The position numbers and the translations under genes are program-made. Below are positions 5,546-61,579 of a DNA stretch of 64,000 bases, in pieces. Below the pieces are notes generated by a model, which did not search any database, was not told the DNA's origin, and saw only the letters and a program-made list of their open reading frames with translations. Location of the stretch: the IMG/VR virus record IMGVR_UViG_3300027759_006101, positions 1 to 64,000 of that record; one strand, 5' to 3'. Positions within the stretch are counted from its first letter, which is position 1. Each line of letters begins with the position of its first letter.

Positions 5546-5572
5546 TTCATAGAATTTTGTACAAGTACCTTC
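5546..5572 (-). promoter_or_regulatory. Putative late promoter, variant GAAGG-N18-TGAA
   Basis: Same GG-N19-GAA geometry as five other intergenic sites; points into 5346-5522. Confidence 0.5.
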
Positions 5573-5574
5573 AT

Positions 5575-5922
5575 ATGCCACGTTATGAATTTGCTTGTAA
5601 TTGTGAAAATGAACCTAAATCTTTTGTAATTTCACTTTCTTTTAGTGAATACAAAGAAGAAATTCCTTGTCCGTGTGGAAAAGGTTTAGCGAAAAGAGTG
5701 TTTAATTCTTTTAATGTTCAAGATGGTCTGACAGCTAAAGAAAAACAATTTGGGACTACTCAAAATAGAAAACATATGGCTGACTTTGTCAAAGAACAAA
5801 AAAACGTAAGAAAACAATCTTACGACCCAAATTCAAGAGAATCTCAATCAAATGAATTATGGACTGGGAAAGAGGGTCTTGATGGTATTACTTCAATGCC
5901 AGTAGAAAGAAAAAAGGAATAA
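5575..5922 (+). CDS. FmdB-family zinc-ribbon protein
   Basis: MPRYEFACNC...IPCPCG...AKRVF matches the FmdB MPxYEYxC pattern; start reassigned from GTG 5491 to ATG 5575. Confidence 0.75.
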   Translation: MPRYEFACNCENEPKSFVISLSFSEYKEEIPCPCGKGLAKRVFNSFNVQDGLTAKEKQFGTTQNRKHMADFVKEQKNVRKQSYDPNSRESQSNELWTGKEGLDGITSMPVERKKE

Positions 5923-5926
5923 GATT

Positions 5927-6700
5927 ATGGAAGAAAATACAGAGCCTGAATCATTTATTGTTCAAAATGTTACTTTAGGTCCTCATTATGTAAGTGATAT
6001 TAGATTAAACTTTGGGCCACTTGAGGCTATTGATTTGACTTGGGAAGATTCTAAAGTTATCAAAGCGTCAAAGGATTTGAGAACATCTTTGCGTATGGGA
6101 TTCTTAAAAAAAATATCATCAGAACAATTTGATAGTATCGAAGAGAAAGCTGCGATTAGAGGAAAGAAAGAATTACTTAGACAGCAGAATGCAAACAACC
6201 TCAGAACAGTTGATGTTGATGGGAAGCAACTCGAAGTAGAAACAATTGATACCGAAAAAGTTTACAAGAAAGAAACTGAGGTATCAACAGCTGGGTATGC
6301 AAATGATTCACTATCATATGCAACAGCCTTTGACATTGCGCAAACACAAGCACAACTAAGGGGAGATGAATTGTCAATTGAAGAGTTTGCTGAACAAGTA
6401 AACAACAACGCAAATTTAGTGCAAAATTTGCTTAGACAACAAAAAAACTTAGATGAAAATTCATCAACTTCAGGTGACAGCAGAAGAGGCAAGGCATTTG
6501 TCGCAGAAGCATCAGACAACCCAGTTAATGGAACATCTGTTAAGCAAGTCAACTTGACGAATTATAACAGAGACAGAGTTGTTGCTGGTGCAGAAATGAA
6601 CTTTTTAGATGCTCCAGATGACGACGGTATTGCTGACACTATCGATTTAGAAACTGAGATTGACCTTGAAAGTGAAAAGGGCTCAATACGACGGGTTTAG
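5927..6700 (+). CDS. Hypothetical protein, probably morphogenesis-related
   Basis: 257 aa ORF with acidic C-terminus, at the head of the neck/tail operon. Confidence 0.7.
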   Translation: MEENTEPESFIVQNVTLGPHYVSDIRLNFGPLEAIDLTWEDSKVIKASKDLRTSLRMGFLKKISSEQFDSIEEKAAIRGKKELLRQQNANNLRTVDVDGKQLEVETIDTEKVYKKETEVSTAGYANDSLSYATAFDIAQTQAQLRGDELSIEEFAEQVNNNANLVQNLLRQQKNLDENSSTSGDSRRGKAFVAEASDNPVNGTSVKQVNLTNYNRDRVVAGAEMNFLDAPDDDGIADTIDLETEIDLESEKGSIRRV

Positions 6701-6702
6701 AA
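6676..6702 (+). promoter_or_regulatory. Exact AAAGG-N18-AGAA match overlapping the end of 5927-6700
   Basis: AAAGG GCTCAATACGACGGGTTT AGAA; could be chance because it lies in coding sequence just before a terminator. Confidence 0.35.
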
Positions 6703-6722
6703 AAGACTTAATAAGACTTGAT

Positions 6723-6755
6723 TAAGGCTATCTTGTCGGTAGCCTTATTTTTTTT
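6723..6755 (+). terminator. Rho-independent terminator
   Basis: TAAGGCTA-loop-TAGCCTTA followed by 8 T. Confidence 0.75.
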
Positions 6756-6764
6756 GGAGAAAAT

Positions 6765-7874
6765 ATGTCAGACGAAATACAAGCAATGTCATATACCCAG
6801 AGTGCATTAGTATATTATAATACTGCTACATCTACACCAGGAATTTTTATAGAATGGGAGCGTTCAGGTGCTAATGGAGTTGAATTTTACAAAATTCAAA
6901 AGTCTGATCAATTTGATGGAACTTACACCACAATAGAGACAGTTCCATTTCCAATCAATGAAGGATGGGATTCAAATGGCCATCCTAGTACTTATTATAG
7001 AATTCAAGAAGTAGATACAAATGGAACTGTACTAAATACAAGTTCTCCATTTTTGGGAGATGAGCTATTAATAAAATCTAGCATTAGATACGAGTTGGAA
7101 CATCTTTTAAATATTTCAATTTATGATGAAGAAGTTGTTTTTAGAAAAGATAGAAAAATTGCAACAGTAGCATTCCCATATTGGAATTATTCTCCAAGAC
7201 CCGATGTTAGAATCAGCGGACCATCAAATCAGGGTGATAGAGACCCAATGATTCAATTATCTGAAACTGCACCAATTTATACCACGATAAATGAAACATT
7301 TGACCCAATCATCAAAAATAGAGATGGGTACGAGTCAGGATTAACAAACGGACACAATTACCCAAATGGTTTAAGATACAAATGTGATTACAAAGGAAAT
7401 ATATATTTCATTGATGCAAATGGAAATTCTGTTTCAATACAATCATACGATAATGTGTTAGTTTCTTACAGTATCAAAATGTTCACAAATGATCATATAA
7501 ACAATGCTTTGTATATGTCTTTACAACAAATCAATGCTCAACCAGGTGCGTCAAAATACCAATCAGTAGCATCTACACCATTTTTCTATGAACCAGCAAT
7601 TGTTTATGGAGCAGTTTATTATCTCTTGAGAAGTCTCCTGATTAGTTTAACAAATAGACAAAGAAGATTATTGATTGAAGACCCTGATGCCCAATTTGTA
7701 GATCAATTAAGACAAACAGCAACTATGTACAAAGAAGATTTTGACAAGATGTTAGAAAAACTTCCAATTGCTACATATCCTGGTGTTAGGTCAGTTGTAG
7801 TTCCAGAATACAATATGCCAGGAGGAAGAAGTAGATTCTTCAGATACATTTGGAACATTGGAACTGGAGGATAG
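6765..7874 (+). CDS. Putative neck/head-completion protein with an N-terminal FN3-like beta segment
   Basis: 369 aa; N-terminal IEW...FYKIQKS..GTYTTIETV; helical C-terminus (YEPAIVYGAVYYLLRSL) resembling adaptor proteins; operon position. Confidence 0.45.
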   Translation: MSDEIQAMSYTQSALVYYNTATSTPGIFIEWERSGANGVEFYKIQKSDQFDGTYTTIETVPFPINEGWDSNGHPSTYYRIQEVDTNGTVLNTSSPFLGDELLIKSSIRYELEHLLNISIYDEEVVFRKDRKIATVAFPYWNYSPRPDVRISGPSNQGDRDPMIQLSETAPIYTTINETFDPIIKNRDGYESGLTNGHNYPNGLRYKCDYKGNIYFIDANGNSVSIQSYDNVLVSYSIKMFTNDHINNALYMSLQQINAQPGASKYQSVASTPFFYEPAIVYGAVYYLLRSLLISLTNRQRRLLIEDPDAQFVDQLRQTATMYKEDFDKMLEKLPIATYPGVRSVVVPEYNMPGGRSRFFRYIWNIGTGG

Positions 7875-8025
7875 ATTTTTTTAAAAATTTCTTTTAAAAT
7901 TAATCATTTAATTAAATTATTCTTTAATTTTTAAATGATCTTTTAAATTTAATGTTAATATATTAATATATACTTCCCTTAATTAATGGGTGTAAAAAAA
8001 CAGACTGAAAAGCAAGGAACACAAA
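7875..8025. other. Extremely AT-rich intergenic stretch with an imperfect inverted repeat
   Basis: ATCATTTAA (7903-7911) / TTAAATGAT (7931-7939) arms; almost no G/C over ~100 nt. Confidence 0.6.
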
Positions 8026-8989: not shown

Positions 8990-9016
8990 CAAGGAACAAA
9001 AAGCTTAATTTGAGAA
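8990..9016 (+). promoter_or_regulatory. Putative late promoter CAAGG-N18-AGAA
   Basis: Intergenic, 9 nt upstream of ATG 9026. Confidence 0.6.
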
Positions 9017-9025: not shown

Positions 9026-9703
9026 ATGTCTCCTTGGTACAAAACAGCTAAAGAATGTCTTGCTATTCGTAAAAATGTATTACGAGTTGATCTTTGTGTA
9101 TTTATTGACAAAGAAGAACAATTTACGAATAAAGATTATTTAAACTCAACAATTAAGTCTATTCTTACATCAGCAATAATTAATGGGTTGGACATTATTG
9201 GAGTGATATCTGCTGACAACCCAACTGTTGGATTGCTAGCTCAACAGATGTGTATAGAGCAAAAAATGGACTTAGTAGTAGTGCCTGGGCAAACGTATAT
9301 CACTAGAGATAATGAGTCTTTGTATGTTTACAATTTGTCAACTCCTATGCCTAAAAATCTTACCTTAGATAAAGCTTGTGAATTTGCTCACAAGAAAGGT
9401 GGATTTGTAATGGTTGCAAATGTTTCTAAACAAATTGCACAAAAAATTAATCGTTTGCAAGGAAGTCTTTATGCGCCAGATGCAGTTGAAGTATTCAATG
9501 CACAAACTGGTGGATATAGGGACATAGATATTGATTTCCCAAGATTTGTTTCTTCTGGAGCAACTTCAGCAAGTGACTTAGAAGAAACAAATGTTTTTAC
9601 TTTGTTAGAAAGAAAAAAAGCAGTAGAAATGGGATTTATTCACAATGAGCAAGGTGTAGATTATACGCCTAAATATTTACTGCCAAAAACTGGAGAAATC
9701 TAA
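9026..9703 (+). CDS. Degenerate PHP-fold protein lacking the metal ligands
   Basis: PHP motif order retained (DLCVF, GLDIIGV, VVPGQT, HKKGGFVMVAN, DAVEVFNA) but the His/Glu ligands are replaced. Confidence 0.65.
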   Translation: MSPWYKTAKECLAIRKNVLRVDLCVFIDKEEQFTNKDYLNSTIKSILTSAIINGLDIIGVISADNPTVGLLAQQMCIEQKMDLVVVPGQTYITRDNESLYVYNLSTPMPKNLTLDKACEFAHKKGGFVMVANVSKQIAQKINRLQGSLYAPDAVEVFNAQTGGYRDIDIDFPRFVSSGATSASDLEETNVFTLLERKKAVEMGFIHNEQGVDYTPKYLLPKTGEI

Positions 9704-40445: not shown

Positions 40446-41300
40446 TTAGCTTACGGTAATTCTTGAAACTGCATAGTCATTGATGAGCGCAAAACCGAGC
40501 TCTTCGTAAACAACCCATCCAAGTCTAAGTCTCTTTGGATCGTCTGCTGGGAGAACAGTAATGTCTTGGCGAACTGGCATTGCACCAACGAATTGGGCAG
40601 GAGCAAGAACGTAAACACTGTTCTTTGGAACCATTGTGGAGACATGGATGTCTGCGGAATAAATATGTCCGTAGAGACCAGTCATAAGGATATCTCTTTG
40701 AGTTGCCTCATCGAAGAATTCCTTACCCCAGTTTCTGATATCCTTGTATCTTTGCGGGTGAAGAACAACCTTAGCGCCGATTAACTCGTGCTCTTCGATG
40801 AGGGTCAACGCAAGGTTGACGTTCTCTGGTTGAAGAGTACCAGAAACGGAGATTGATTGGTCAGTTGGAACACCAGCATTGATGACCTTGAAGACTTCAG
40901 TATCTTCTTGTCTTTGGAGGGAGTCCTTAGCACGGACTTGAGCTCTATCGACGATGTAGAATCTTCTTTGGCGAATCTCATTGAGTCTGATCTGTGGATG
41001 AGCAGCCAACTCAATGGTTGGAACAAGAAGCTCTTCTGCTTCAACTTCTGCAGCAGGAACAGCACCACGCTTAGGAATAACGTATGACTTTACAGCCACG
41101 TCTCTCTCATAGCGAGCTAAAGCACCTTGTGGGAGCTCATCGACCATAAGAAGCTTACGGCCAATTGCTTGGTACATAAGGGAGGTCTTGATTGGCTCAA
41201 CCATTGCTTGTGCAAGTGCTGTGCGTCCCTCTGGAGTCTCAAGAGCCATTGCAATAATGGACTCTCTTTGCTCATTTGTGTTTCTCTTAATCATTGACAT
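40446..41300 (-). CDS. Major capsid protein, HK97 fold
   Basis: 284 aa, last gene of the head operon, AGGAG SD; VVLHPQRYKDIR, GLYGHIYSADIHVS and GWVVYEELG fit the HK97 A/P-domain pattern. Confidence 0.85.
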   Translation of the reverse strand: MSMIKRNTNEQRESIIAMALETPEGRTALAQAMVEPIKTSLMYQAIGRKLLMVDELPQGALARYERDVAVKSYVIPKRGAVPAAEVEAEELLVPTIELAAHPQIRLNEIRQRRFYIVDRAQVRAKDSLQRQEDTEVFKVINAGVPTDQSISVSGTLQPENVNLALTLIEEHELIGAKVVLHPQRYKDIRNWGKEFFDEATQRDILMTGLYGHIYSADIHVSTMVPKNSVYVLAPAQFVGAMPVRQDITVLPADDPKRLRLGWVVYEELGFALINDYAVSRITVS

Positions 41301-43789: not shown

Positions 43790-43816
43790 TTCTTGATAAA
43801 TAGGTTTTACACCTTT
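43790..43816 (-). promoter_or_regulatory. Putative late promoter AAAGG-N18-AGAA
   Basis: AAAGG TGTAAAACCTATTTATCA AGAA, intergenic upstream of the scaffold. Confidence 0.7.
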
Positions 43817-43823: not shown

Positions 43824-43853
43824 ATTTACGGGGAGATAAATCTCCCCATAAAT
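43824..43853 (-). terminator. Stem-loop after the protease gene
   Basis: GGGGAGA-4 nt-TCTCCCC with an extended AT stem; no clear U tract on the minus strand. Confidence 0.5.
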
Positions 43854-48032: not shown

Positions 48033-48059
48033 TTCTAAAAATGTACTCTTTAAACCTTT
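48033..48059 (-). promoter_or_regulatory. Putative late promoter AAAGG-N18-AGAA
   Basis: AAAGG TTTAAAGAGTACATTTTT AGAA, intergenic upstream of the protease. Confidence 0.7.
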
Positions 48060-48072: not shown

Positions 48073-48098
48073 TAAACCCGTCGGTTTCGACGGGTTTA
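48073..48098. terminator. Perfect 11-bp stem-loop after the portal gene
   Basis: TAAACCCGTCG-GTTT-CGACGGGTTTA. Confidence 0.75.
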
Positions 48099-48117: not shown

Positions 48118-50499
48118 TTATAAATATTTTTCACCATCTCCATTTGAACTTTGACCTGTACGTTTTTTAATTGCATTTATCAAGACGTTCAAACAATCTT
48201 GAGGATGATCTTGTAGCTCTTTATCAGTAAATCTAATTATAATCCAACCATTGACTGCTAATTCTGAATCTCTTCTCTTATCTTTAGCAATTTTATCTGG
48301 ATTGTTGTGCCAAATTTCTCCATCTGCTTCAACACCAATTTTCAAGTTTGGAATTGCTCCATCCAATTGATAATCCATTGTTGGACCAGCTGAATATTGA
48401 GCATAAAGTGGGAAAGGCATATTCAATGACATCAATAATCCATATAATTTCTTTTCTAAAGACGTAAACATCTTTGGTTGATTAATGTTTTCTAATTTTT
48501 TTGCAATAACCTGTCTGATAGATTCATTTTTGTTATTTGCATAATGATGCATTTCATTCATAGCATAATTATTCAATGGGTAAGAAAGCGAACCGCCAAT
48601 AAACGGTGTATCAATTACTCCAAAAAGACCATCATACTCAACTGGCAGAGGGCCTAAATTAGCTCTACCAGTAACAGGTTTCAGACTCATTAAGAAAGCT
48701 TCGTGAGCTGAAGATTTTATTTTCTTACTTGCGGTTCTAATTTTATCTGATTTATTTAAGTCGTCTAGTCTATTTTGATATATACTATTTACAATGTCTG
48801 ATGCGAGCCTATAATTTTCAAGCATAGATTTTGCTGTAGGCGCTGGAGCTTCTGGCATTGGGGCCGGAGGAGCTGCTCCAGCTGGAGAAGCACCAGGAGC
48901 TCCACCAACACCAAGGTCTGGTGCAGGAGGGGCTGCGCCCATGTCTGCACCTCCAGATGCGCCAAACCCTTGACCTGTTACGCCACCACTTTGAAAACTT
49001 AATGATATATTTGGTGTTCCAAAACTTTGGTCGCTCATAAAATTAGCGCCTTGTTCATATCTAAGTCTTTCAATTTCTTGGTCAGAATCAAGACCAAATG
49101 CTTCAATCAAGGAAACATTTGAAATTACACCATTCTGATTTGCTGTTACAAGCATCTGCAATTTGCCAGTGTCGTCTCTTAACTGCAGGTCATCAAATTT
49201 AATACGTGGATAAACAATTTCTTCTTGCCCACGTTCTCCTTCAATAACAAATCCATTCCATTTTGCAACGGGCATGAAAATATTCATTTCTACCCAGTGA
49301 GCAACTTCTCTTCGGAATGTTTCTAGTCTTTGAGCCATTGCAAGAAGACCAACTTGAGCGTTTCCGTAAGTAGGTCCTTCACCATTCAACAAGGCTTTAT
49401 TAAGCATGACACCATCAAGAATTTCTTGTTCGATAAGTTCAAATTCACCAGTCAAAGGGTGAATTTTTCCAGTTGCACCATACCACTCTAGATCAAAGTT
49501 ATGGTGAGTAACAAGAGTTAGGTTTGGATCATTCGCAATTGACGCTAATTCATCTTGAACATTGTCGATGTCTTCTTGAGATGCTGGTCTTGTATCGCTA
49601 CCAATCTTTACAACTTTGATTGGTAAAATAAGGCGTTCAGCAATCATATACTGAGCTTGTCTCAGTTTATCTTTGTATGTCAAAATTGGGAATAATGGTC
49701 TTATCATAGAGATGCCATAATCTTCCCAAGGATTTGAACCATACTTAAAGTGATGTATGGAAATCTGGTTTAATTTGATAGGATCGCCCTTGAGAATAAG
49801 TTTCTTAATTCCGTCTGGGATAGAATCATAAATATCTTTAGGATGTCTTTCGTTTACAATTCGGATTTCTTCAGCAGACGGTCTGTAAGCATAGCTACCC
49901 TGCTGGTCAATCATCCCTGGAGTCTTAATTACATTATCAGGGTTTAAAATAGAAATGGATTTCCAAGAAGCTCCATCGTGTTGACATTCTTGATTTTTAT
50001 CTTCGTCCCAGTTTGAACCGTGGCAGTGAGGGCAATCAATAGATAACAGAACAAAAGCATCACCTAATAAATGATATACTTTTGAAATTTCAGGAAGCCA
50101 TTTTTGAAAATTAAGTTTTTCTACTAATTTTTCAAAATAATCTTTAACGTAAGAAGATGAACATTCTAATTTCCAACCAGAGAATGGATAATTGGTATAG
50201 AAGTTAATTGCTGCAGAAACTTTTGGTTCATTGTTCTTCCACCAGTTTGCCCATAGATACACTTCACGTCGAGCATTTGGGATTTGAAATGAAGATGGAG
50301 TAAGGAATGGAGAATAGAAGTTAGGAGCAGTTGTGATAGAATTGATACTGGCAGATCTTGTAACACCAGGACCTAATCCTAAGCCAATACGACTACTTGC
50401 ATATGCTTGTTTTGATTCTGAAGTGGCTGTACTAGTCGAGCCTGAAACTTGTGTTGCTGCTGTTCTAATAGCAGATGCAAGAGATGTTTTTGTTGCCAT
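48118..50499 (-). CDS. Portal protein fused to a C-terminal DUF559/Vsr-like endonuclease
   Basis: Portal-like core (KVSAAINFYTNYP, YHLLGDAF, HHFKY...PWEDYGISMI, IKFDDLQL), P/A/G linker, then FTSLEKKL...QY...LDGAI...VEADGEIWH...DKRRD..L..NGWIIIRF. Confidence 0.8.
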   Translation of the reverse strand: MATKTSLASAIRTAATQVSGSTSTATSESKQAYASSRIGLGLGPGVTRSASINSITTAPNFYSPFLTPSSFQIPNARREVYLWANWWKNNEPKVSAAINFYTNYPFSGWKLECSSSYVKDYFEKLVEKLNFQKWLPEISKVYHLLGDAFVLLSIDCPHCHGSNWDEDKNQECQHDGASWKSISILNPDNVIKTPGMIDQQGSYAYRPSAEEIRIVNERHPKDIYDSIPDGIKKLILKGDPIKLNQISIHHFKYGSNPWEDYGISMIRPLFPILTYKDKLRQAQYMIAERLILPIKVVKIGSDTRPASQEDIDNVQDELASIANDPNLTLVTHHNFDLEWYGATGKIHPLTGEFELIEQEILDGVMLNKALLNGEGPTYGNAQVGLLAMAQRLETFRREVAHWVEMNIFMPVAKWNGFVIEGERGQEEIVYPRIKFDDLQLRDDTGKLQMLVTANQNGVISNVSLIEAFGLDSDQEIERLRYEQGANFMSDQSFGTPNISLSFQSGGVTGQGFGASGGADMGAAPPAPDLGVGGAPGASPAGAAPPAPMPEAPAPTAKSMLENYRLASDIVNSIYQNRLDDLNKSDKIRTASKKIKSSAHEAFLMSLKPVTGRANLGPLPVEYDGLFGVIDTPFIGGSLSYPLNNYAMNEMHHYANNKNESIRQVIAKKLENINQPKMFTSLEKKLYGLLMSLNMPFPLYAQYSAGPTMDYQLDGAIPNLKIGVEADGEIWHNNPDKIAKDKRRDSELAVNGWIIIRFTDKELQDHPQDCLNVLINAIKKRTGQSSNGDGEKYL

Positions 50500-53497: not shown

Positions 53498-53499
53498 TT

Positions 53500-54373: not shown

Positions 54374-55408
54374 TTAATTTTTCTTGTCGTATTTCTTGGT
54401 AAATAAGGCGTCGATCCAATCTTGGTCGCCATAGCCTAAATCATTTTTCCAATAATCAATGAGTCTTGAATAATCAGCATCAGAAAGTGTTGCTGTCTTA
54501 ATCATTGATGACGCTGCAGCAATCTTAGTACTGTGATCGAGCTTTGATGCTAAAACACTTCTGATTTTTGCTGTATTGTCAACCTTTTTAGTAGCAACTT
54601 CGCCAATTCTTGCTTGGATATACTCAACTGGGAAACCCTCTGCAAGAGCCTTTTGTGCAAAAGCTGTTTTCATAGCAGGAGTCATTCCAGAATTTTGAGT
54701 CTTTCTAGATGCAGTCTTAACTGGTTGTGGTTGAACTGATTGCTCTTCAACACTTTGAACAAGTGCTTCTCTGTAAGCTCTTCTTTGTGCTAATCTAACA
54801 GACTTTTCTTTTTCAGAAGCAATTCTTGTTTCAATTTGTGAAGCAAGTCTGATTCTTCTGTCGTGTCTAGCAGCAAGAATAGCACTCTTTAAGTGCTCAT
54901 CGCCAGCAGCTTCTGCAGCTTCAACTGCTTCTGCGGAAAGTTGTGAAGGATGGTTGAAGACATATGCTTTCTTAACTTTCTCATCTTTCTTAGGACCTTT
55001 TCTCTTCATCGGGCCCTTTGCATGATCTTCGTGATCTTCTTCTTCTTCGTCTTCGTGATCTTCGTCTTCGTGATCTTCAGATTTGTTTTTCTTGCCTTTC
55101 TTGTTCTCTTCAAGCCACTTAGCTAAGCCAGGATTAAGGCCTTTCTTAGCCATTTTGGTTGAATTGTGATACATAGATTCATCTTCCACATCTTCATTTG
55201 CGTAAGAAGAACCAGCTTCTTGTAACATATCAACCTTTTCTTTGCCAATAGAGTCTAAGAGTGCTTTAAGACCTTTATCTTTGTCTTCCTCACCATTTTC
55301 AGCAGCTGCTAATCTTTGGTTAAAGTTATCCCAGTCAATTCCTTGAAAAACAAGGTCAGAATCAAGAGGGTCTTCTTGATATCTGTTTGGGAAAATTCTA
55401 TCTGCCAT
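54374..55408 (-). CDS. Highly charged head-associated (scaffold-like) protein
   Basis: 344 aa; DHEDE repeats; RLAS, RLAQ, KTAS, KTAT; GAGGAG SD. Confidence 0.65.
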   Translation of the reverse strand: MADRIFPNRYQEDPLDSDLVFQGIDWDNFNQRLAAAENGEEDKDKGLKALLDSIGKEKVDMLQEAGSSYANEDVEDESMYHNSTKMAKKGLNPGLAKWLEENKKGKKNKSEDHEDEDHEDEEEEDHEDHAKGPMKRKGPKKDEKVKKAYVFNHPSQLSAEAVEAAEAAGDEHLKSAILAARHDRRIRLASQIETRIASEKEKSVRLAQRRAYREALVQSVEEQSVQPQPVKTASRKTQNSGMTPAMKTAFAQKALAEGFPVEYIQARIGEVATKKVDNTAKIRSVLASKLDHSTKIAAASSMIKTATLSDADYSRLIDYWKNDLGYGDQDWIDALFTKKYDKKN

Positions 55409-55448
55409 AATTTTGTTTTCTCCTCAAGAAAAAATACATTAAAAAAAC

Positions 55449-55475
55449 TTCTTAAATTTAAAGGGTAATTCCTTT
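55449..55475 (-). promoter_or_regulatory. Putative late promoter AAAGG-N18-AGAA
   Basis: AAAGG AATTACCCTTTAAATTTA AGAA. Confidence 0.7.
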
Positions 55476-55482
55476 AATGCAT

Positions 55483-55866
55483 CTATTTATTTTCTTTATC
55501 TAAAATCAGTTTGTTGCCCTTCATTATAAGCTTATCGCCTATTTTTATACCCAATTTGTCAAAAGTTCCCTTATTTGCTTCTACAACAAAAATAATCTTT
55601 GAACTTTCAGGATAAACAGATTTAGGATCATCTGCTTCCATATCTTTAATGTCTCGAATTCTGTACTTATCATCTAAAAAAGCTAATGATAATGGAAAAC
55701 TAACATTTTTATTCCAAAAAGAGTAACAGTCAGGATAATCAAACTTGAAAACGACAACTTCGAAGTTTTCTAAAGGCTCCGCAAACATTAAGCCTTTTGT
55801 TCGTAATTTGTCATTATTTGCTAAAAATCTAATTTCAAATTCATCACGGAATTTGTCTTTAGTGAG
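55483..55866 (-). CDS. DUF192-family domain whose N-terminus lies upstream of the first ATG, in frame after the UGA of the previous gene
   Basis: LTKDKFRDEFEIRFLANNDKLRTKGL-MFAEPL...FWNKNVSFPLSLAFLD...VVEANKG...IKIGD. Confidence 0.75.
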   Translation of the reverse strand, partial: LTKDKFRDEFEIRFLANNDKLRTKGLMFAEPLENFEVVVFKFDYPDCYSFWNKNVSFPLSLAFLDDKYRIRDIKDMEADDPKSVYPESSKIIFVVEANKGTFDKLGIKIGDKLIMKGNKLILDKENK

Positions 55867-56358
55867 TCAAGAACCAACTTTCTTAAATTTATTAGCAGAA
55901 GCCTTTACACTTCTTGCAGCTTCTAAATCAAATCTATCTTTAGTTCTTTGTTTTCTAAACTCATTGACATTTTCTGTTGAGAGAAAATGATCTCTAAGAG
56001 CTAATTTTGCCCTATCTGTCAGTTCTACAGATCTGCCATAGCCTGTTATTAATCCAGCTGTTTTCAATGCAAGCAAATCATTATCAGAAATATTGTTTGG
56101 AACACTGCAGACTTTTCCATCTTTGTTTAAGGCCAATTGAGACGCTGCAGTAACAAGTTCGTCAGTAGAAGCATCTATAGTCCTAAGCATATCAATATAT
56201 CTAGTGCTCAATTTAGCTGCTTCTGCCTTTTTAGGTTGTTGGGAAACTCCTAATAGTTGAATTTGGATGTCTGATAATCCAAGTCCTTCCATTGATGGGC
56301 CGTCAAATAATTCTGCGTGTAAATCTAAACTATGTACTGGTTTAATTGGTATTGGCAT
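55867..56358 (-). CDS. Hypothetical head-associated protein, possible read-through fusion to DUF192
   Basis: Start moved to ATG 56358 after an AAGGAG SD; winged-helix-like LLALKTAGLITGYGRSVELTDRAK; ends KFKKVGS-TGA. Confidence 0.7.
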   Translation of the reverse strand: MPIPIKPVHSLDLHAELFDGPSMEGLGLSDIQIQLLGVSQQPKKAEAAKLSTRYIDMLRTIDASTDELVTAASQLALNKDGKVCSVPNNISDNDLLALKTAGLITGYGRSVELTDRAKLALRDHFLSTENVNEFRKQRTKDRFDLEAARSVKASANKFKKVGS

Positions 56359-56368
56359 AATAATCTCC

Positions 56369-56809
56369 TTATCTGTTTGGTAATCTATTTTTCCAAGCAT
56401 TGCCTTCGTCTACATTTTTCTGATATGTTTCTTCCCAAGTAAAAGATAAAGTATCTCCCGCCATAGATGGGCTTGATGCTAAATTTCCTGGATCGATATA
56501 TGCTGGACCTGGAACACTATCTGGGCCGTGCAATAAGCCTTCAATGTTTGGACCATCTTGCTCTCCACCCAAATCAAAATAATCTCTAACAAATCTATTG
56601 GGTTTTATCTTTTGTCTAAAGTAGTCATTTTCTTTATATTCATCTTCAATTTCTTCATATTCAACAAAATGAACGTGTGGCACCTTAGTTACCGACTGTT
56701 GAGGATAGTATTGAGCAAATTTGTTGAATAATTTGTCAGACTGAGCGAATTTGCCTGATGAATCTAATTTTTCACAAAGGTCCAGCAAAAGTAAAATTTG
56801 TTTATTCAT
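56369..56809 (-). CDS. Hypothetical protein
   Basis: Start moved to ATG 56809, 1 nt after the upstream stop; MNKQILLLLDLCEKLDSSGKFAQSDKLFNKFAQ. Confidence 0.65.
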   Translation of the reverse strand: MNKQILLLLDLCEKLDSSGKFAQSDKLFNKFAQYYPQQSVTKVPHVHFVEYEEIEDEYKENDYFRQKIKPNRFVRDYFDLGGEQDGPNIEGLLHGPDSVPGPAYIDPGNLASSPSMAGDTLSFTWEETYQKNVDEGNAWKNRLPNR

Positions 56810-56810
56810 T

Positions 56811-57800
56811 TTAAAATGTTGGTCCCATAAATCCACTTAATAATGTGTCATATTGCTCTTCGACACTTGCATCTTCAGTTGGTGTTGGTTTTACAAAATT
56901 AAAATAAGAAGAAGGCATTTTTGGTTGACGTATATTACTTTCAATAGATTGGAATGGGTCTATTTGTTTTAATTCTGCACTTTCTTCACCAGTAAACTTT
57001 CTAGGAGTTAAATTGACATTTGCATCAGGATTTGGATAAGTCAATAAGGTGTCTTTCAATTGGTATTCTTGATAACCGTCTTGATCTGGTGTATTGACAT
57101 TTATCAAATCATCAAAGTATTGTTCTAAATCAGATCCGTGTTCTAACAATGGGGTTTTACCTAACGGTTCATTACTGATTTGTTCTACATCATATCTATT
57201 TCTTGGCTCAGCATATTCTTCAGTAATTCTATTTCTTCTTTTGATTTGATAGTCTTCTGCTACACGGTTTATGTCATTTTCTGAAATTGCAAAGTGAATT
57301 CTTGATGGTTTGTCTGGATCTTTGTATTCTTCTCCCATAAACTTATAATCTTTTTTGTATTTATGCCTGTCTTCTAAAGACTGTTCCATAGTCATAAGAT
57401 GCTCAGGTTTAGCATTAAAATTTTGTTTTATGTACTGGGGAGAGTTTTTATGTAAATCGTTAGCTGCATTTTCTAAAGACTGTTTGTAATTATGAAGTTG
57501 AGCACGAAGTTTAGCTCTCATTCTTTCTTCAGGGGTTAAATTGTATGGAATTGATTCTTCGTAATGTTTATGTTGTGGAGTAAGACGGCTTTCGATATTT
57601 GCATCTCTGCCATCAAATTCCATATGGGTTTTACGGAGCAACTTATCAAAATTTGCGTCTTCATCGACATACAAATTTATCTCATGTCCGCCTCTATTGT
57701 TACCACCCTTACCAATAGGACTTTTTCCAGGCATGAATGGAGACACTTGTCCGCCGCCACCAACGCCTCCAAATTGTGCTATACGAATATTTTCAGACAT
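56811..57800 (-). CDS. Hypothetical head-associated protein
   Basis: 329 aa, starts MSENIRIAQFGG. Confidence 0.65.
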   Translation of the reverse strand: MSENIRIAQFGGVGGGGQVSPFMPGKSPIGKGGNNRGGHEINLYVDEDANFDKLLRKTHMEFDGRDANIESRLTPQHKHYEESIPYNLTPEERMRAKLRAQLHNYKQSLENAANDLHKNSPQYIKQNFNAKPEHLMTMEQSLEDRHKYKKDYKFMGEEYKDPDKPSRIHFAISENDINRVAEDYQIKRRNRITEEYAEPRNRYDVEQISNEPLGKTPLLEHGSDLEQYFDDLINVNTPDQDGYQEYQLKDTLLTYPNPDANVNLTPRKFTGEESAELKQIDPFQSIESNIRQPKMPSSYFNFVKPTPTEDASVEEQYDTLLSGFMGPTF

Positions 57801-57809
57801 AATGATTTT

Positions 57810-57836
57810 TTCTTATTTTAAAATTTATAATCCTTT
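57810..57836 (-). promoter_or_regulatory. Putative late promoter AAAGG-N18-AGAA
   Basis: AAAGG ATTATAAATTTTAAAATA AGAA, 9 nt before ATG 57800. Confidence 0.7.
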
Positions 57837-57845
57837 ATACTTTAA

Positions 57846-59957
57846 TCATCTTCTGTTCAAATTGACCATTTTTGATTTAGGCAATCTTGCGATAATTTTA
57901 GAAGTAAGACATTCAAAAGAAACTGCGGCAACACAGTCACATATGTCGTCTTTGTAACCAGACAATGCTTCGATATAGTATCTTTTGCCTTTCCATTTTT
58001 TTTGCAAGAATAAAAACTGAGTTTTTGCTTCTTGAACTTCATTTAGTGGTTGTAGTGTATTGTGCATATCTGCGTAACTACCACCTGATAAATCATAGAC
58101 ATCAATCCTGTCATCTCTAATTAATTGAGCTAATTCTGTATAGATTTTTTCTTTATATTCTTTATTAAATTGTCTCTCTATAATTGGAACGCCATAACTT
58201 TGAAGCTTTATAACTGATGATTGTGAATTCCAGTGATCAATTGAAACTTGCTTAAATCTAAATCTACGATGTAAATCAATTACATAGTCTTCAACTTCTT
58301 TTTCTTTGACAGGTTGATTTCTTGTAAGAGGATTCCAAAAATGGATATGATCTATGACAACTCTCTTAAGAGGTGTATGGTCAGGCCCAATAGTCCCATA
58401 CATTGTCTCTGTATGAGCAATGACAAGAGCATAATAGTCAGATGTTCTCGCAGGGTCAATATGGCAAAAATATTCGAAAAGACCGTCTGGCATTTCTTTT
58501 CTTTTAACCATATTTTGACTTTTGAACATTTTATCTATATCTTCGGACATAAACATAGGGTCTGATGATGAAGCACCAAACTCAGCTCCATATTGCATTT
58601 GAAATTCTTGTGGGTCTTTTCTCTTTTGCCCATCAAGCCATTCTTTATCAATGTTTGGATTAGTAAGCCAAGTAGGAAGTCTCATCACAAGAGTTGTTGG
58701 ATCTTCCTGTCTATTTTCATGCAAGTCATATAGCAATCCAATAGGGCCTTTGGGGTTGGAAAGAAGCATCATTTTGCCATCTTTACCAAATGTAGCTAGT
58801 GATGGCTTCAAATCATCATAAAGACCGTAGTCAACGCCAGAATCTGGATTATCTCCTGCCATGGCTGCAACTTCGTCCATAATAATAGACCAACAAGTAA
58901 GACCAACAAGACCTGAAGCATTACTACTACCACATCTTAGGACTAATGATCCAGCAAAAGGATTGATTTTATCTTCTGCTCTTCTGACATTTTCTTCCCT
59001 ATCGTGTTCAGTATAAAACCTCATTTCAAGTTCAGTATCTTTACCTATATATGGAGCAAAAAATGGAGAAGCCAGAACTGTCTGTTTGATTTTTGAGAAG
59101 ATTGCTTTTTTAGCCTGTTCTTCATTTCTAGCAACGTTCAAGAGTACAATCTCATCAAATTCCATTAGTCCATATCTTGCTTGTGGATGACCCATAGATA
59201 TTAAACGATATAATTCATAAAGAGCCATAGCAGATACAAGGAACGATTTGCCAGAACGTCTCCCCAGTACTAAGACTAATTCTTCAAACTTGTATCTTTT
59301 TGTGCATTTTTCTTGAACTTGCATCCTTAGTTTTGGATCAAATTCCTCAGAATACAATAAATCGTTTTCTGTTTGAAACCCATCTATTATTGGCCTTGAT
59401 TCTAATACTTCTACCTGTCTTTCAGCATCTGGATTAGTTGCTTCTTGACGAGCATATCTATATCTTTCATCTCTTACGTTACTGTCAAGCCTAGAACACT
59501 GTAAACAAGGCGAATTTACAACGTTAAAAATAGTTTTAAATTGCTTTTCTTGTTCTCTAGCTTTAAAGAAAGCAGTTTCATTTTTATGGACATAATTCCA
59601 TACGCAACCATTACATCCAGAATCTGATTTATCATCTAAAATTGTAAGACTGGTATTTCCTTCCTGACCCATATAAAAACATTTCAAAATTAATTTTTGC
59701 CAAGGATAAGGCCTTAAATTACAAAAATACGGATGCTCAATAAATGTAATAATGTCTACAATTTGGTCAGGATTGAATCTATCTTTTGCAGGTTTGGCAG
59801 GAGGTGCAACTTCTTGTCTTCTTGCTGGAACAATTTCATCAGCAAAATCATTTGCATATTCAGTATCTTTGAAAAGTTCAGTTACAGAATTGGCTTGTTG
59901 TAGAAGCTGACTTCTAAGTTCATTGGAAGACTTGACTACAGGAGTTGGTTTTCTCAT
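57846..59957 (-). CDS. terL: Terminase large subunit
   Basis: Walker A LGRRSGKS, Walker B IIMDE, LSNP coupling motif, FQMQYGAEF, nuclease HIDPA and KDDICD. Confidence 0.95.
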   Translation of the reverse strand: MRKPTPVVKSSNELRSQLLQQANSVTELFKDTEYANDFADEIVPARRQEVAPPAKPAKDRFNPDQIVDIITFIEHPYFCNLRPYPWQKLILKCFYMGQEGNTSLTILDDKSDSGCNGCVWNYVHKNETAFFKAREQEKQFKTIFNVVNSPCLQCSRLDSNVRDERYRYARQEATNPDAERQVEVLESRPIIDGFQTENDLLYSEEFDPKLRMQVQEKCTKRYKFEELVLVLGRRSGKSFLVSAMALYELYRLISMGHPQARYGLMEFDEIVLLNVARNEEQAKKAIFSKIKQTVLASPFFAPYIGKDTELEMRFYTEHDREENVRRAEDKINPFAGSLVLRCGSSNASGLVGLTCWSIIMDEVAAMAGDNPDSGVDYGLYDDLKPSLATFGKDGKMMLLSNPKGPIGLLYDLHENRQEDPTTLVMRLPTWLTNPNIDKEWLDGQKRKDPQEFQMQYGAEFGASSSDPMFMSEDIDKMFKSQNMVKRKEMPDGLFEYFCHIDPARTSDYYALVIAHTETMYGTIGPDHTPLKRVVIDHIHFWNPLTRNQPVKEKEVEDYVIDLHRRFRFKQVSIDHWNSQSSVIKLQSYGVPIIERQFNKEYKEKIYTELAQLIRDDRIDVYDLSGGSYADMHNTLQPLNEVQEAKTQFLFLQKKWKGKRYYIEALSGYKDDICDCVAAVSFECLTSKIIARLPKSKMVNLNRR

Positions 59958-60637: not shown

Positions 60638-60643
60638 TTACTC

Positions 60644-60650
60644 ATTATAC
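60644..60650 (-). promoter_or_regulatory. GTATAAT -10 box 6 nt before the TerS-candidate ATG
   Basis: TTGTATAAT GAGTAA ATG. Confidence 0.55.
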
Positions 60651-60652
60651 AA

Positions 60653-60686
60653 AATAAACAAGCCGCATATTTGCGGCTTGTTTATT
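60653..60686. terminator. Rho-independent terminator, 15-bp perfect stem
   Basis: AATAAACAAGCCGCA-TATT-TGCGGCTTGTTTATT. Confidence 0.85.
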
Positions 60687-60701
60687 AATTTCAAGATATA
60701 A

Positions 60702-61415
60702 CTAATCTGCTAAAGCTCTTTTAAGCCTTTGATATGGAGAAACTGAATCTGCTGCCTTGACAAGATACTCATCTGCTAGGCCGAAATCAGCGTAGTTCCC
60801 TTCGTTAAATTTATTGCTTGAAGAAGTTGCTGAAGACAAATCAACTTCAGCTGTGCCTTTTCTCATTGATACAACATACTTATTGTTTGATGCTGTTTTG
60901 ATTTCTGCATCTTGTGATTGAGCAATTAAGACATTGTTCAATAAAGTTTCTTCAATGAAAGGCTTGAGGGCAACGTGTAAATTGTCCATGCCAACTCTTG
61001 TAGACTTAGCCATTTCAGCCCATCTTTGCCATTGAGATAAACCCTTTTCATCTGTCTTAACAATTGAATGTGGTCCAGTGCAAAGTTTCTTGACAAATTC
61101 TTTAGCTGACAATTTAGTAAGAGTTTTTTCAATTATAGGAGCGCAATCAGAGTACCTAGTAGGAACGACAGAAACTTCAATCGCATCTCTTTGTTTGACT
61201 TTTTCAGCAGAGTCAAATAACTTGGAAGCAACTCTATTAGCAATGTCCAAATCAAAATTGTCGGCTGCAAGTAATTCTACAACTTCGGACTTATCAAAAC
61301 CTTGATTTTTATATTTTTGTGCTTGGCTATTGGCTACAACAAAAACACCATCATGATGTGAGCGTAATTCATTGCGCCAGTTGTAAATCATGTCATTTGA
61401 ATTGTTTTCAGACAT
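60702..61415 (-). CDS. Hypothetical protein with KxAS motifs
   Basis: 237 aa; NRVASK, IKTASN; GGGGA SD. Confidence 0.7.
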   Translation of the reverse strand: MSENNSNDMIYNWRNELRSHHDGVFVVANSQAQKYKNQGFDKSEVVELLAADNFDLDIANRVASKLFDSAEKVKQRDAIEVSVVPTRYSDCAPIIEKTLTKLSAKEFVKKLCTGPHSIVKTDEKGLSQWQRWAEMAKSTRVGMDNLHVALKPFIEETLLNNVLIAQSQDAEIKTASNNKYVVSMRKGTAEVDLSSATSSSNKFNEGNYADFGLADEYLVKAADSVSPYQRLKRALAD

Positions 61416-61469
61416 TATCTTTCCCCTAAGATTTTTTTTTGAATTCCACTAAAAAGGACTTAAATAAAT

Positions 61470-61507
61470 AAAACCTCTAGACGTACTTTTAATGTCTCAG
61501 AGGTTTT
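61470..61507. other. Interrupted stem-loop in the divergent intergenic region
   Basis: AAAACCTCT AGAC-N11-GTCT C AGAGGTTTT. Confidence 0.55.
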
Positions 61508-61552
61508 TGTGGAACATATTTATATAATACGAGAATTTCAAAAATATATTCC

Positions 61553-61579
61553 AAAGGTTAAGATAGTAGATTTGTAAAA
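61553..61579 (+). promoter_or_regulatory. Near-match late promoter AAAGG-N18-AAAA
   Basis: One mismatch to the motif, 10 nt before ATG 61590. Confidence 0.4.

What the first reader, a model, noticed from the sequence alone, without database searches (positions are those of the whole stretch)
5546..61579. Fixed-spacing phage promoter motif AAAGG-N18-AGAA before morphogenesis genes
Exact 18-nt spacing is seen at intergenic sites 48033-48059, 43790-43816, 55449-55475 and 57810-57836 (all minus), 8990-9016 (plus, CAAGG), with variants at 5546-5572 and 61553-61579. All point into structural genes, and I noticed none at the sugar island's promoter. The AGG(A/T)...GAA shape resembles the established sigma-H -35 AGGA / -10 GAAT consensus. 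Inference: a phage-encoded sigma-H/ECF-like late sigma factor lies outside this window.
Basis: partly seen in the sequence, partly recalled or inferred. Interest (0 to 1): 0.65.

Follow-up and report, generated by a model that had tools for sequence, protein, structure and literature searches.

The report
Sigma-H-type late promoters of jumbo phage
The repeated AAAGG-N18-AGAA signal is real and conserved, has the shape of a promoter, and sits before the head and packaging genes of an uncultivated 358-kb freshwater phage, which also encodes a sigma-H-like factor 4.6 kb beyond the window that probably reads it.

Summary
Observation confirmed. AAAGG-N18-AGAA occurs 7 times in the window against 1.3 expected. 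Its core is AGG-N19-GAA.

- **Enrichment.** In the intergenic DNA of the whole 358,269-bp phage record, the two boxes are enriched only at this spacing. AAGG..AGAA gives 13 at gap 18 against about 1.5 at other gaps, and no shuffle of 300 reaches that count.
- **Replication.** The same spike appears in five related phage contigs with 55-80% protein identity.
- **Conservation.** Upstream of orthologous genes the boxes and the spacing are kept (pairwise identity 0.94 and 1.00). Spacer and flanks drift (about 0.65-0.69).
- **Targets.** In the window the sites precede the scaffold-like/major-capsid operon, the protease-fusion gene, a 344-aa gene leading towards the portal gene, and a 329-aa gene next to the terminase gene.
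- **Geometry.** It equals the published Bacillus subtilis sigma-H promoter, AGGAATT-N14-CGAAT.
- **Sigma factors.** The phage encodes four small sigma-70-family factors and no RNA polymerase detectable by Pfam. The factor at 68,634-69,344 is specifically SigH-like: E 3.6e-29 to true SigH, with a near-identical region 4.2 helix.

Recognition, late timing and transcription start sites remain untested. This is a new member of a known kind: a phage-encoded sigma factor with cognate promoters.

The parts
57810..57836 (-). Class-1 site AAAGG-N18-AGAA. The ATG of the 329-aa gene (56811-57800) lies 9 nt after GAA with no Shine-Dalgarno (SD) sequence, so a leaderless mRNA is predicted.
   Evidence: Boxes, spacing and the 9-nt distance are kept in 6 of 6 genomes while the spacer changes.
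55449..55475 (-). Class-1 site reading AGGAATT-N14-AGAAG. It lies 40 nt before the 344-aa gene (54374-55408), with a GAGGAG SD in the leader. It heads the unit running towards the portal gene.
   Evidence: Conserved in all 16 distinct related loci and in G001-G005.
48033..48059 (-). Class-1 site 38 nt before the 1379-aa gene that carries a prohead-protease domain (43855-47994). It follows a hairpin.
   Evidence: AGG/AGAA and spacing are kept in 6 of 6 genomes; AAAGG becomes ACAGG in the relatives.
48074..48097 (-). G+C-rich hairpin (AAACCCGTCG-AAAC-CGACGGGTTT) after the portal gene and just upstream of the 48033 site. This is a terminator-then-promoter layout.
   Evidence: Read from the sequence. 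Conserved in the relatives.
43790..43816 (-). Class-1 site 81 nt before the acidic scaffold-like 562-aa gene. It heads the unit 42020-43708, 41333-41986 and 40446-41300 (major head protein).
   Evidence: Conserved in 5 of 5 genomes.
43830..43847 (-). [quoted passage not shown]
   Evidence: Read from the sequence.
5546..5572 (-). Variant site GAAGG-N18-TGAA (AGG-N19-GAA kept), 23 nt before the 58-aa ORF.
   Evidence: The orthologous site in G005 at 63797 keeps the boxes.
5346..5522 (-). Conserved 58-aa Cys-rich (zinc-ribbon-like) ORF, followed by the 882-aa gene (2695-5343). It is the first gene behind the 5546 site.
   Evidence: The coding sequence is conserved in G001, G003 and G005.
8990..9016 (+). 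Site CAAGG-N18-GAGAA, with the ATG of the 225-aa gene (9026-9703) 9 nt after GAA. It is specific to this genome.
   Evidence: No AGG-N19-GAA before the orthologues in G001, G003 or G005.
61553..61579 (+). Variant AAAGG-N18-AAAA(T) before the 914-aa gene (61590 onwards). The G of the second box is replaced by A.
   Evidence: AAGG-N18-AAAAT is kept before the orthologue in G001-G004.
55880..55906 (-). Exact AAAGG-N18-AGAA match inside the 3' end of the 177-aa ORF, 91 nt before the DUF192 gene (55483-55788). Doubtful; possibly an internal promoter.
   Evidence: The region is coding, so its conservation is not informative.
40446..41300 (-). Major head protein gene, last gene of the unit behind the 43790 site.
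   Evidence: phrog_2522 major head protein, E 4.8e-68.
48118..50499 (-). Portal protein gene, with a C-terminal nuclease-like domain. It lies downstream in the unit behind the 55449 site.
   Evidence: phrog_16240 portal, E 1.4e-28; PF06074 Portal_Mu; PF18741/PF04480 at residues 706-777.
57846..59957 (-). Large terminase gene. It marks the module as head and packaging. It has no class-1 site of its own.
   Evidence: phrog_2 terminase large subunit, E 9.6e-29.

Best explanation
The motif wAAAGGww-N(about 14)-TwAGAAwAA, with invariant core AGG-N19-GAA, is the -35/-10 pair of a phage-specific promoter class.

It occurs in an uncultivated 358-kb freshwater jumbo phage and its relatives. About 19 oriented intergenic copies exist in this genome, and six or seven of them lie in the window. 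They head the transcription units for head, packaging and other virion genes.

Proposed mechanism, all of it inferred:
1. Host RNA polymerase with host primary sigma transcribes early genes from TTGACA-N17-TGnTATACT promoters. These include a long operon that holds two phage sigma genes.
2. The 236-aa SigH-like sigma factor, encoded at genome position 68,634-69,344, replaces the host sigma on the host core enzyme.
3. Its region 4.2 helix reads AGG(A/T) at -35, and its region 2 reads (A)GAA at -10.
4. Transcription starts about 8-10 nt after GAA.

Where the start codon lies 9-11 nt after GAA and there is no Shine-Dalgarno (SD) sequence, the mRNA would be leaderless. Elsewhere a 23-81-nt leader carries a strong SD.

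What is shown: the motif, its statistics, its conservation, the identities of the genes behind it, the sigma genes, and the similarity of one of them to SigH. What is inferred: recognition of the motif by that sigma factor, late timing, and the start sites.
For: - **Enrichment and spacing.**, replicated in five related contigs.
- **Orientation and position.** Every intergenic site points into a gene 9-81 nt away. Two sites follow terminator-like hairpins.
- **Footprint.** Across six ortholog groups, pairwise identity is 0.94 and 1.00 in the boxes, 0.65 in the spacer and 0.67/0.69 in the flanks. Spacing never changes.
- **Extra conserved positions.** Positions not used to pick the sites are biased: A at -2 and -1 in 14 of 19 each, A before GAA in 14 of 19, and an A-rich stretch after it.
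- **Tight distance class.** The start codon lies 9-11 nt after GAA, without SD, at 5 of 19 sites here. The distance is kept in the orthologues.
- **Gene identities.** Major head protein, prohead-protease domain, portal, terminase, a LysM protein and an Ig-like structural protein.
- **Not sigma-70-type.** No sigma-70-type promoter sits at these gaps. The scan gave 52 found against 61 expected in the module. Sigma-A-type promoters cluster elsewhere, at 155-173 kb.
- **Polymerase and sigma genes.** Pfam finds no phage RNA polymerase. Four sigma ORFs are present.
- **SigH similarity.** The 236-aa sigma has SigH models as its best NCBIfam hits, at 105-110 bits. It is 32% identical to bona fide SigH, E 3.6e-29, whereas the other three give E >= 1e-5.
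- **Region 4.2 helix.** KCVDNALTRIRKK in the phage against KSIDNALQRVKRK in SigH.
- **Conservation of the sigma.** It is 75-100% identical across the clade and syntenic in all five relatives.
- **Published sigma-H motif.** AGGAATT-N14-CGAAT (PMC6849360) and RNAGGAWWW / RNNGAATWW (PMC8510167) give the same AGG-N19-GAA geometry.
Against: - No transcription start site data. The only RNA evidence is metatranscriptome contigs. These cannot show 5' ends or strand and may contain DNA, and some span the 55449 site.
- The sigma factor falls below NCBIfam's SigH equivalog cut-offs.
- The fourth base of the -10 box is T, as in GAAT, at only 6 of 19 sites.
- Three other phage sigma factors could be the reader of the motif.
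- Not all targets are structural. PhoH and several unknown genes carry the site. The terminase operon and most tail genes have no site of their own.
- The 8990 site is not conserved.
- The host is unknown. The only binning hint points to a Bacteroidetes MAG, a phylum without SigH. That conflicts with the Shine-Dalgarno and TTGACA signals.
- In some groups the whole short intergenic region is conserved, for example at the 344-aa gene. The footprint there is less discriminating.
Confidence: 0.62

Rival explanations
1. The motif is a promoter class, but a different sigma factor reads it. Candidates are one of the other three phage sigma factors (188 aa at 64,302-64,868; 191 aa at 203,372-203,947; 189 aa at 219,958-220,527) or the host's own sigma-H.
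For: - Four sigma genes exist.
- The 188-aa sigma is also syntenic beside the head module in all five relatives.
- If the host is a Bacillota member, its own SigH would read AGGA..GAAT-type promoters.
- A second box pair, AAGT-N18-GAAT, shows that more than one specificity is in play.
Against: - Only the 236-aa protein resembles SigH in the DNA-reading helices.
- The other three have unrelated region 4.2 helices.
- Reliance on host SigH would make the highly conserved phage copy redundant.
Confidence: 0.2
2. The two boxes are half-sites of a phage DNA-binding regulator, either an activator or a repressor, and not -35/-10 elements. The real promoter elements lie elsewhere or are weak.
For: - The boxes are similar purine-rich words (AAAGG and AAGAA) about two helical turns apart.
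- No start-site data exist.
Against: - The spacing is exactly that of sigma-H promoters.
- The conserved 9-11-nt distance to start codons without SD leaves no room for another promoter downstream.
- No sigma-70-type promoter accompanies the sites.
- The orientation is strictly towards the gene.
Confidence: 0.08
3. The pattern is a by-product of composition. On this view it reflects Shine-Dalgarno-like AAGGA words plus A-rich leaders in AT-rich intergenic DNA, or inheritance of duplicated upstream regions, and has no function of its own.
For: - AAGG and AGAA are common words in these intergenic regions: 200 and 341 copies in 38 kb.
- Two target genes, 9026 and 289367, look like paralogues with similar N-termini.
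Against: - A single-spacing spike remains against dinucleotide shuffles and against all other spacings, in six genomes.
- The boxes stay invariant while the spacers diverge.
- The first box is not followed by a start codon at Shine-Dalgarno distance.
Confidence: 0.03

Closest known systems
Sigma-H (SigH, Spo0H) promoters of Bacillus subtilis and other Bacillota
   Same: - The -35 core is AGGA(W) and the -10 core is GAA.
- The geometry is identical: AGGAATT-N14-CGAAT equals AGG-N19-GAA (PMC6849360; PMC8510167).
- The candidate reader is a two-domain sigma factor whose nearest cellular relatives are SigH.
   Different: - The -10 box is AGAA(A/T), not RNNGAAT.
- The sigma factor is phage-encoded, about 32% identical to SigH and below the equivalog cut-offs.
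- The regulon is virion morphogenesis, not the transition state or sporulation.
- The host is unknown and the habitat is freshwater.
Bacillus phage SPO1 sigma cascade (gp28 for middle genes, gp33/gp34 for late genes)
   Same: Phage-encoded sigma factors redirect the host core RNA polymerase from sigma-A early promoters to phage-specific promoters (abstract of PMC13401047, listed, not read further). From my own knowledge, the SPO1 middle -35 box is AGGAGA-like.
   Different: - No sequence relationship to gp28 or gp34 was tested here.
- The -10 boxes differ.
- This phage carries four sigma genes, and none was matched to the SPO1 factors.
Sigma factors of 'group 2' jumbo phages (Iyer et al. 2021, PMC7824862)
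   Same: A jumbo phage with no RNA polymerase of its own but with phage-encoded sigma factors that recruit the host enzyme (here).
   Different: Group 2 sigma factors are described there as minimal single-HTH or RpoD-like, partnered with T4 gp33/gp55-type late machinery. Here the candidate is SigH-like and has a two-box promoter.
Phage-borne homologues of sporulation sigma factors (sigF/sigG-like; Schwartz et al. 2022, cited in PMC10294663)
   Same: Phages carry homologues of Bacillota alternative sigma factors. JGI labels this clade's protein 'sporulation-specific sigma factor'.
   Different: Those homologues are discussed as manipulators of host sporulation. Here about 19 cognate-looking sites lie in the phage's own genome, before virion genes. 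That points to a role in the phage's own programme.
ECF (group 4) sigma promoters (AAC at -35, CGT at -10)
   Same: The sigma factor is small and has only regions 2 and 4. TIGR02937 sigma70-ECF is matched above its cut-off.
   Different: The boxes are AGG and GAA, not AAC and CGT (from my own knowledge of the ECF consensus). No anti-sigma partner was sought.

Membership tests
Sigma-H-type promoter (AGGAATT-N14-CGAAT; RNAGGAWWW / RNNGAATWW) | -35 core AGGA followed by A/T | tested here: met
   AGG is invariant by selection. The next base is A or T at 16 of 19 sites and the following base at 15 of 19. The site at 55449 reads AGGAATT.
Sigma-H-type promoter (AGGAATT-N14-CGAAT; RNAGGAWWW / RNNGAATWW) | Fixed distance between the boxes, equal to AGG-N19-GAA | tested here: met
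   The spacing histograms spike only at this gap in six genomes. The published motif gives the same distance.
Sigma-H-type promoter (AGGAATT-N14-CGAAT; RNAGGAWWW / RNNGAATWW) | -10 core GAAT | tested here: inconclusive
   GAA is invariant. The fourth base is T at 6, A at 10, G at 2 and C at 1 of 19 sites. The preceding base is A at 14 of 19, where B. subtilis has C or N.
Sigma-H-type promoter (AGGAATT-N14-CGAAT; RNAGGAWWW / RNNGAATWW) | Transcription starts a few bases downstream and depends on a SigH-family sigma factor | not testable with these tools
   Only metatranscriptome contigs were available, and they cannot show 5' ends.
SigH protein family (NCBIfam TIGR02859, NF006148, NF006145) | Score above the curated equivalog cut-off | tested here: not met
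   105-110 bits against cut-offs of 208-295 bits. These are nonetheless the best-scoring families. Bona fide SigH controls score 243-363 bits.
SigH protein family (NCBIfam TIGR02859, NF006148, NF006145) | SigH-like promoter-reading segments in regions 2 and 4.2 | tested here: met
   The alignment shows ...REDV.QE..G..KA...K..F..F...R...TAI..A.R.K...LN...SLD.P and SY.EIS..L....K.[IV]DNAL.R[IV][KR][KR]K shared with SigH. The other three phage sigma factors lack these segments.
Sigma-70 family, two-domain (ECF-size) sigma factors | Regions 2 and 4 present, region 3 absent, about 190-240 aa | tested here: met
   PF04542 plus PF08281/PF04545 are found in three of the four ORFs. In the 188-aa ORF region 2 is weak and below the cut-off. 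TIGR02937 is above its cut-off for all four.
Canonical sigma-70/sigma-A promoter (TTGACA-N17-TATAAT) | Both hexamers at 16-18 nt spacing at the motif sites | tested here: not met
   No such match falls at the gaps 43.7-43.9, 48.0-48.1, 55.4-55.5 or 57.8 kb. The module as a whole gave 52 matches against 61 expected.
Phage late promoter class | Precedes virion and lysis genes and is absent from the early region | tested here: met
   13 of 19 sites lie in the structural super-module, at 278-358 kb plus 1-64 kb, which is contiguous in relative G003. None lies in the sigma-A-rich region at 155-173 kb. Some targets are non-structural or unknown.
Phage late promoter class | Activated late in infection | not testable with these tools
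   No time-resolved expression data are available.

The most novel reading that the evidence does not exclude
A widespread clade of uncultivated freshwater jumbo phages (contigs up to about 380 kb, found in many lake metagenomes) has captured a SigH-family sigma factor. The clade uses it as the master switch of its own virion-gene programme. A sizeable share of its late mRNAs are leaderless, starting at the A of the ATG 9-11 nt after the -10 box. A second related box pair, AAGT-N18-GAAT, is read by another of its four sigma factors, giving a multi-sigma cascade. If the host is not a Bacillota member, a SigH-type factor would be working with a foreign core enzyme.
Probability: 0.35. Interest if true: 0.65.

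Novelty: new member of a known kind. Interest (0 to 1): 0.5.

Why it matters
- **Annotation of a poorly known genome.** The motif gives a concrete, testable promoter code and a candidate cognate sigma factor for a large clade of environmental jumbo phages whose genes are mostly unannotated. The motif alone marks about 19 transcription units. It therefore flags unknown genes as probable virion or late genes.
- **A different role for a phage-borne sporulation-type sigma factor.** SigH-family factors would join the list of sigma types that phages use to run their own programme, in contrast to manipulating host sporulation.
- **Leaderless late mRNAs.** The predicted leaderless subset is checkable with a single 5'-end mapping experiment.
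- **Host prediction.** The Shine-Dalgarno, extended -10 and SigH-type signals point to a Bacillota-like transcription and translation apparatus, which constrains the host.

Tried and rejected
- **PWM extension.** A position weight matrix built from 11 seed sites found no further strong members; it only recovered its seeds. I returned to the dyad core and spacing tests.
- **Inflated AGG-N19-GAA count.** Part of the count comes from an unrelated hairpin repeat family at 154-172 kb (AGGAATGGTAnnTACCATTCCTGAA). I identified these and set them aside. My mask removed only two of them.
- **Close relatives among deposited phages.** A megablast of 6 kb of the window against 50,697 phage records found nothing. 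Terminase tblastn gave only matches at 27% identity or less.
- **RNA evidence.** Four lake metatranscriptome runs were laid on 52500-58400 (5,901 letters, within the operators' limit). They are contigs only and give no usable 5' ends. Contigs in two runs break at 55442 and 55444, close to the predicted start of the 344-aa gene's mRNA, but this cannot be interpreted.
- **Primary sigma-H regulon paper.** It could not be fetched by PubMed id or by a PMC id that I guessed. The consensus was taken from two later papers.
- **Promoters of the sigma genes.** Nothing lies directly upstream, because the genes sit inside operons. Only one sigma-A-like promoter was seen, at about 72.45 kb at the head of the operon.
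- **The 562-aa gene as major capsid protein.** Rejected. It is an acidic, coiled-coil, zinc-ribbon protein. The capsid gene is 40446-41300. Structure prediction was therefore not run.
- **Host from the 'provirus' flag on relative G003.** All its genes are phage-like and there is no host flank.
- **Searches deliberately not run or not needed.** No other genetic code was used.

Full report
**What the window is.** The window is the first 64 kb of a single 358,269-bp IMG/VR virus record. The record has 33.7% G+C, nine tRNA genes and a CheckV completeness estimate of 89%. Near-identical DNA is held by many freshwater and lake metagenome runs. No close relative exists among 50,697 deposited phage records.

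The minus-strand block from 40.4 to 61.4 kb is a head and packaging module:
- large terminase at 57846-59957;
- portal at 48118-50499;
- a 1379-aa protein with a prohead-protease domain at 43855-47994;
- an acidic scaffold-like 562-aa protein at 42020-43708;
- the major head protein at 40446-41300.

AAAGG-N18-AGAA has 7 exact matches in the window against 1.31 expected, and no shuffle of 100 reaches 7.

I called genes roughly over the whole record and ran an unbiased dyad scan of the 164 oriented upstream regions. AAGG-N18-AGAA came out among the top signals, at 12 against 1.7 expected. It stood beside a sigma-70-type pair (CTTGACA-N17-ATACT) and a hairpin family.

The cleanest test is the spacing histogram, which needs no composition model:
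- AAGG..AGAA gives 13 pairs at gap 18 and 0-4 at every other gap from 5 to 35.
- AGG..GAA gives 30 at gap 19 against about 7 elsewhere.
- Dinucleotide shuffles give 8.1 +/- 2.7 for AGG-N19-GAA (observed 28) and 1.1 for AAGG-N18-AGAA (observed 13). No shuffle of 300 reaches either count.

A few of the AGG-N19-GAA hits belong to an unrelated hairpin repeat at 154-172 kb.

- The 5546-5572 'variant' is on the minus strand (GAAGG-N18-TGAA). It lies 23 nt before a conserved 58-aa Cys-rich ORF (5346-5522) that my ORF caller and the plain ORF list both missed. The overlapping plus-strand ORF probably starts at 5575.
- The 8990 site exists, but three relatives lack it.
- The 61553 site has A in place of the G of the second box. 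This variant is itself conserved in four relatives.
- The matches at 6676 and 17612 are in coding sequence. The match at 55880 is in the 3' end of a coding region and is doubtful.

**Independent replication in relatives.** The 344-aa protein behind the 55449 site found 41 related loci in IMG/VR at 52-100% identity. In all 16 distinct upstream sequences AGG, GAA and the spacing are kept while the spacer changes.

I fetched five long related contigs, G001-G005, of 106-169 kb.
- Each shows the same single-gap spike and passes the shuffle test.
- Sites found independently in each genome sit before the same orthologues. The counts are 6 of 6 for the 329/330-aa gene, 6 of 6 for the protease-fusion gene, 6 of 6 for the 344-aa gene, 5 of 5 for the scaffold/capsid operon, 4 of 4 for a 1450-aa gene and 3 of 3 for an 848-aa gene.
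- Mean pairwise identity is 0.94 and 1.00 in the two boxes, 0.65 in the spacer, and 0.67 and 0.69 in the flanks.

**Anatomy.** Nineteen oriented intergenic sites in this genome give the consensus wAAAGGww-N-TwAGAAwAA. Positions not used for selection are biased: A at -2 and -1 in 14 of 19 each, and A before GAA in 14 of 19.

- Two window sites directly follow G+C-rich hairpins that end the preceding gene, a terminator-then-promoter layout.
- The distance from GAA to the start codon falls into two classes. One is 23-81 nt with a strong Shine-Dalgarno (SD) sequence in between (GAGGAG, AAAGGA, GGGAG). The other is a tight 9-11 nt with no SD (57810, 8992, 145484, 286259, 289859).
- The short distance is conserved to the base in orthologues; AGAAcaaatcattATG occurs in five relatives.
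- The short class is what a promoter whose start site coincides with the ATG would look like. It leaves no room for any other promoter.

Thirteen of the 19 sites lie in 278-358 kb plus 1-64 kb. This is one contiguous structural region, because relative G003 joins the two ends of the record. None lies in the early-looking region at 155-173 kb, where sigma-A-type promoters with an extended -10 (TTGACA-N17-TGnTATACT) and strong SD sequences cluster. No sigma-70-type pair sits at the motif gaps.

**The predicted sigma factor exists.** Pfam sigma-70 regions 2 and 4 find four ORFs of 188-236 aa, all outside the window:
- 64,302-64,868(-);
- 68,634-69,344(-);
- 203,372-203,947(-);
- 219,958-220,527(+).

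Pfam models for multisubunit RNA polymerase find nothing. The single-subunit model also found nothing, but that control did not ring anywhere, so it is uninformative. The phage must therefore use the host core enzyme.

The 236-aa protein at 68,634-69,344 has SigH models as its five best NCBIfam matches (E about 1e-30, 92-110 bits). These are below the equivalog cut-offs.
- A scan of bacterial genomes returned true SigH proteins as its nearest cellular relatives. I confirmed two of them as SigH, at 243-363 bits.
- The phage protein matches them at 32% identity over 188 residues, E 3.6e-29. The other three phage sigma factors give E of 1e-5 or worse.
- In the alignment the region 4.2 recognition helix is KCVDNALTRIRKK in the phage and KSIDNALQRVKRK in SigH. 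Region 2 also shares a long SigH signature. The other three sigma factors differ there.
- The protein is 75-100% identical across the clade, more conserved than the virion proteins. It is syntenic in all five relatives.

**Match to sigma-H promoters.** PMC6849360 gives the B. subtilis sigma-H motif as AGGAATT(-35)-N14-CGAAT(-10). PMC8510167 gives RNAGGAWWW and RNNGAATWW. AGGAATT-N14-CGAAT is AGG-N19-GAA, which is exactly the invariant geometry found here. The strongest window site, 55449, reads AGGAATT-N14-AGAAG. The phage -10 box differs in preferring A before GAA and in having A or T after it.

**Most likely mechanism (inferred).**
1. Host sigma-A holoenzyme transcribes the early genes. A TTTACA-N17-TATAAT promoter at about 72.45 kb heads the long minus-strand operon that contains two of the sigma genes.
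2. The SigH-like factor then directs the host core enzyme to the AGG-N19-GAA promoters that head the virion-gene units.
3. Some of those units yield leaderless mRNAs.

I put about 0.85 on 'this is a promoter class' and about 0.6 on 'the 236-aa SigH-like factor reads it'.

The rivals are:
- another phage sigma factor or host SigH as the reader of the motif;
- a two-half-site regulator;
- a composition artefact, which the spacing and conservation tests largely exclude.

**What could not be shown.** The metatranscriptome runs available are assembled contigs. They cover most of 52.5-57.6 kb but cannot give 5' ends, strand or level, and may include DNA.

The host is unknown. The SD usage, the TGn-extended -10 and the SigH-type factor suggest a Bacillota-like apparatus. 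The only binning hint, a 6.9-kb contig in a 'Bacteroidetes' MAG with a 93% identical sigma factor, points elsewhere and is weak.

**Comparison and novelty.** Phage-encoded sigma factors with their own promoters are a known kind. Examples are SPO1, T4 and the 'group 2' jumbo phages. Phage-borne homologues of sporulation sigma factors are also known.

Only 9 of 50,697 deposited phage records show any SigH-like match. All are at about 30% identity and all are short fragments. A SigH-family factor with about 19 cognate-looking sites before a phage's own virion genes therefore appears to be a new member of that kind, not a new kind.

Noticed in passing
G000:C1 108658(-), 192733(+), 230974(+), 232202(+), 278630(-), 310666(-); outside the window: A second two-box class, wAAGT-N18-GAATa, occurs 8 times in intergenic DNA against 0.6 expected. 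Pooled over six genomes the spacing histogram gives 15 at gap 18 against about 3 elsewhere. Two ortholog pairs keep the boxes with different spacers. Three times it sits back to back with a class-1 site in a divergent gap. It could be the target of another of the four sigma factors.
   Followed up: partly
G000:C1 about 154000-173000; outside the window: The early-looking region holds small genes, tRNA genes and repeated cassettes. Each cassette is a hairpin (AGGAATGGTAnnTACCATTCCT), then TGAAAA..TTGTCAAATAAA, then a sigma-A-type promoter (TTGACA-N17-TGnTATACT) and a strong Shine-Dalgarno sequence.
   Followed up: partly
window 5346-5522 (-): A conserved 58-aa Cys-rich (CxxC...CxxC) ORF is hidden under the longest-ORF call 5491-5922(+). 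The plus-strand gene probably starts at the ATG at 5575. That leaves a 52-nt divergent gap, which holds the 5546 site.
   Followed up: partly
window 29508-29544: The divergent gap of the 'sugar island' has no class-1 site. It does have TATAAT 6 nt before the ATG at 29545, a sigma-A-like -10 box in a leaderless geometry.
   Followed up: no
window 48118-50499 (-), residues 706-777: The portal protein carries a C-terminal nuclease-like domain: PF18741 REase_MTES_1575 (below its cut-off), PF04480 DUF559 (above its cut-off), and phrog_503.
   Followed up: no
window 42020-43708 (-): The 562-aa protein before the capsid gene is extremely acidic, with long D/E runs. It also has a coiled-coil segment and a CxxC...CxxC motif. 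JGI labels its relatives 'ssDNA-binding Zn-finger/Zn-ribbon topoisomerase 1'. It looks like a scaffold or internal head protein.
   Followed up: partly
window 55431-55444 and 55541/55677: Metatranscriptome contigs from two lake runs break or jump at 55442 and 55444 (skipping 98 and 232 nt) and diverge at 55431. These positions are close to the start predicted for the 344-aa gene's mRNA. The breaks may reflect strain variants or assembly chimeras.
   Followed up: no
L113 (VEQB01000117.1, MAG 'Bacteroidetes bacterium ZLKRG02', 6,960 bp): A short contig binned into a Bacteroidetes MAG encodes a sigma factor 93% identical to the phage's SigH-like protein. It is probably a phage fragment. As a host hint it conflicts with the Shine-Dalgarno and TTGACA signals.
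   Followed up: no
G003 (IMG/VR contig of 122,087 bp, flagged provirus): Every called gene is phage-like and there is no host flank. Its gene order joins the region homologous to 333-358 kb of this record directly to the region homologous to 1-64 kb. The ends of the record are therefore arbitrary.
   Followed up: partly
G000:C1 141289-141313 (+); orthologues G002 112138 and G004 18692: Here the AGG box is part of the 3' arm of a terminator hairpin (GAAGCCCTCC-AATAA-AGGGGGGCTTC plus a T run). Terminator and putative promoter overlap, and the arrangement is conserved in two relatives.
   Followed up: no
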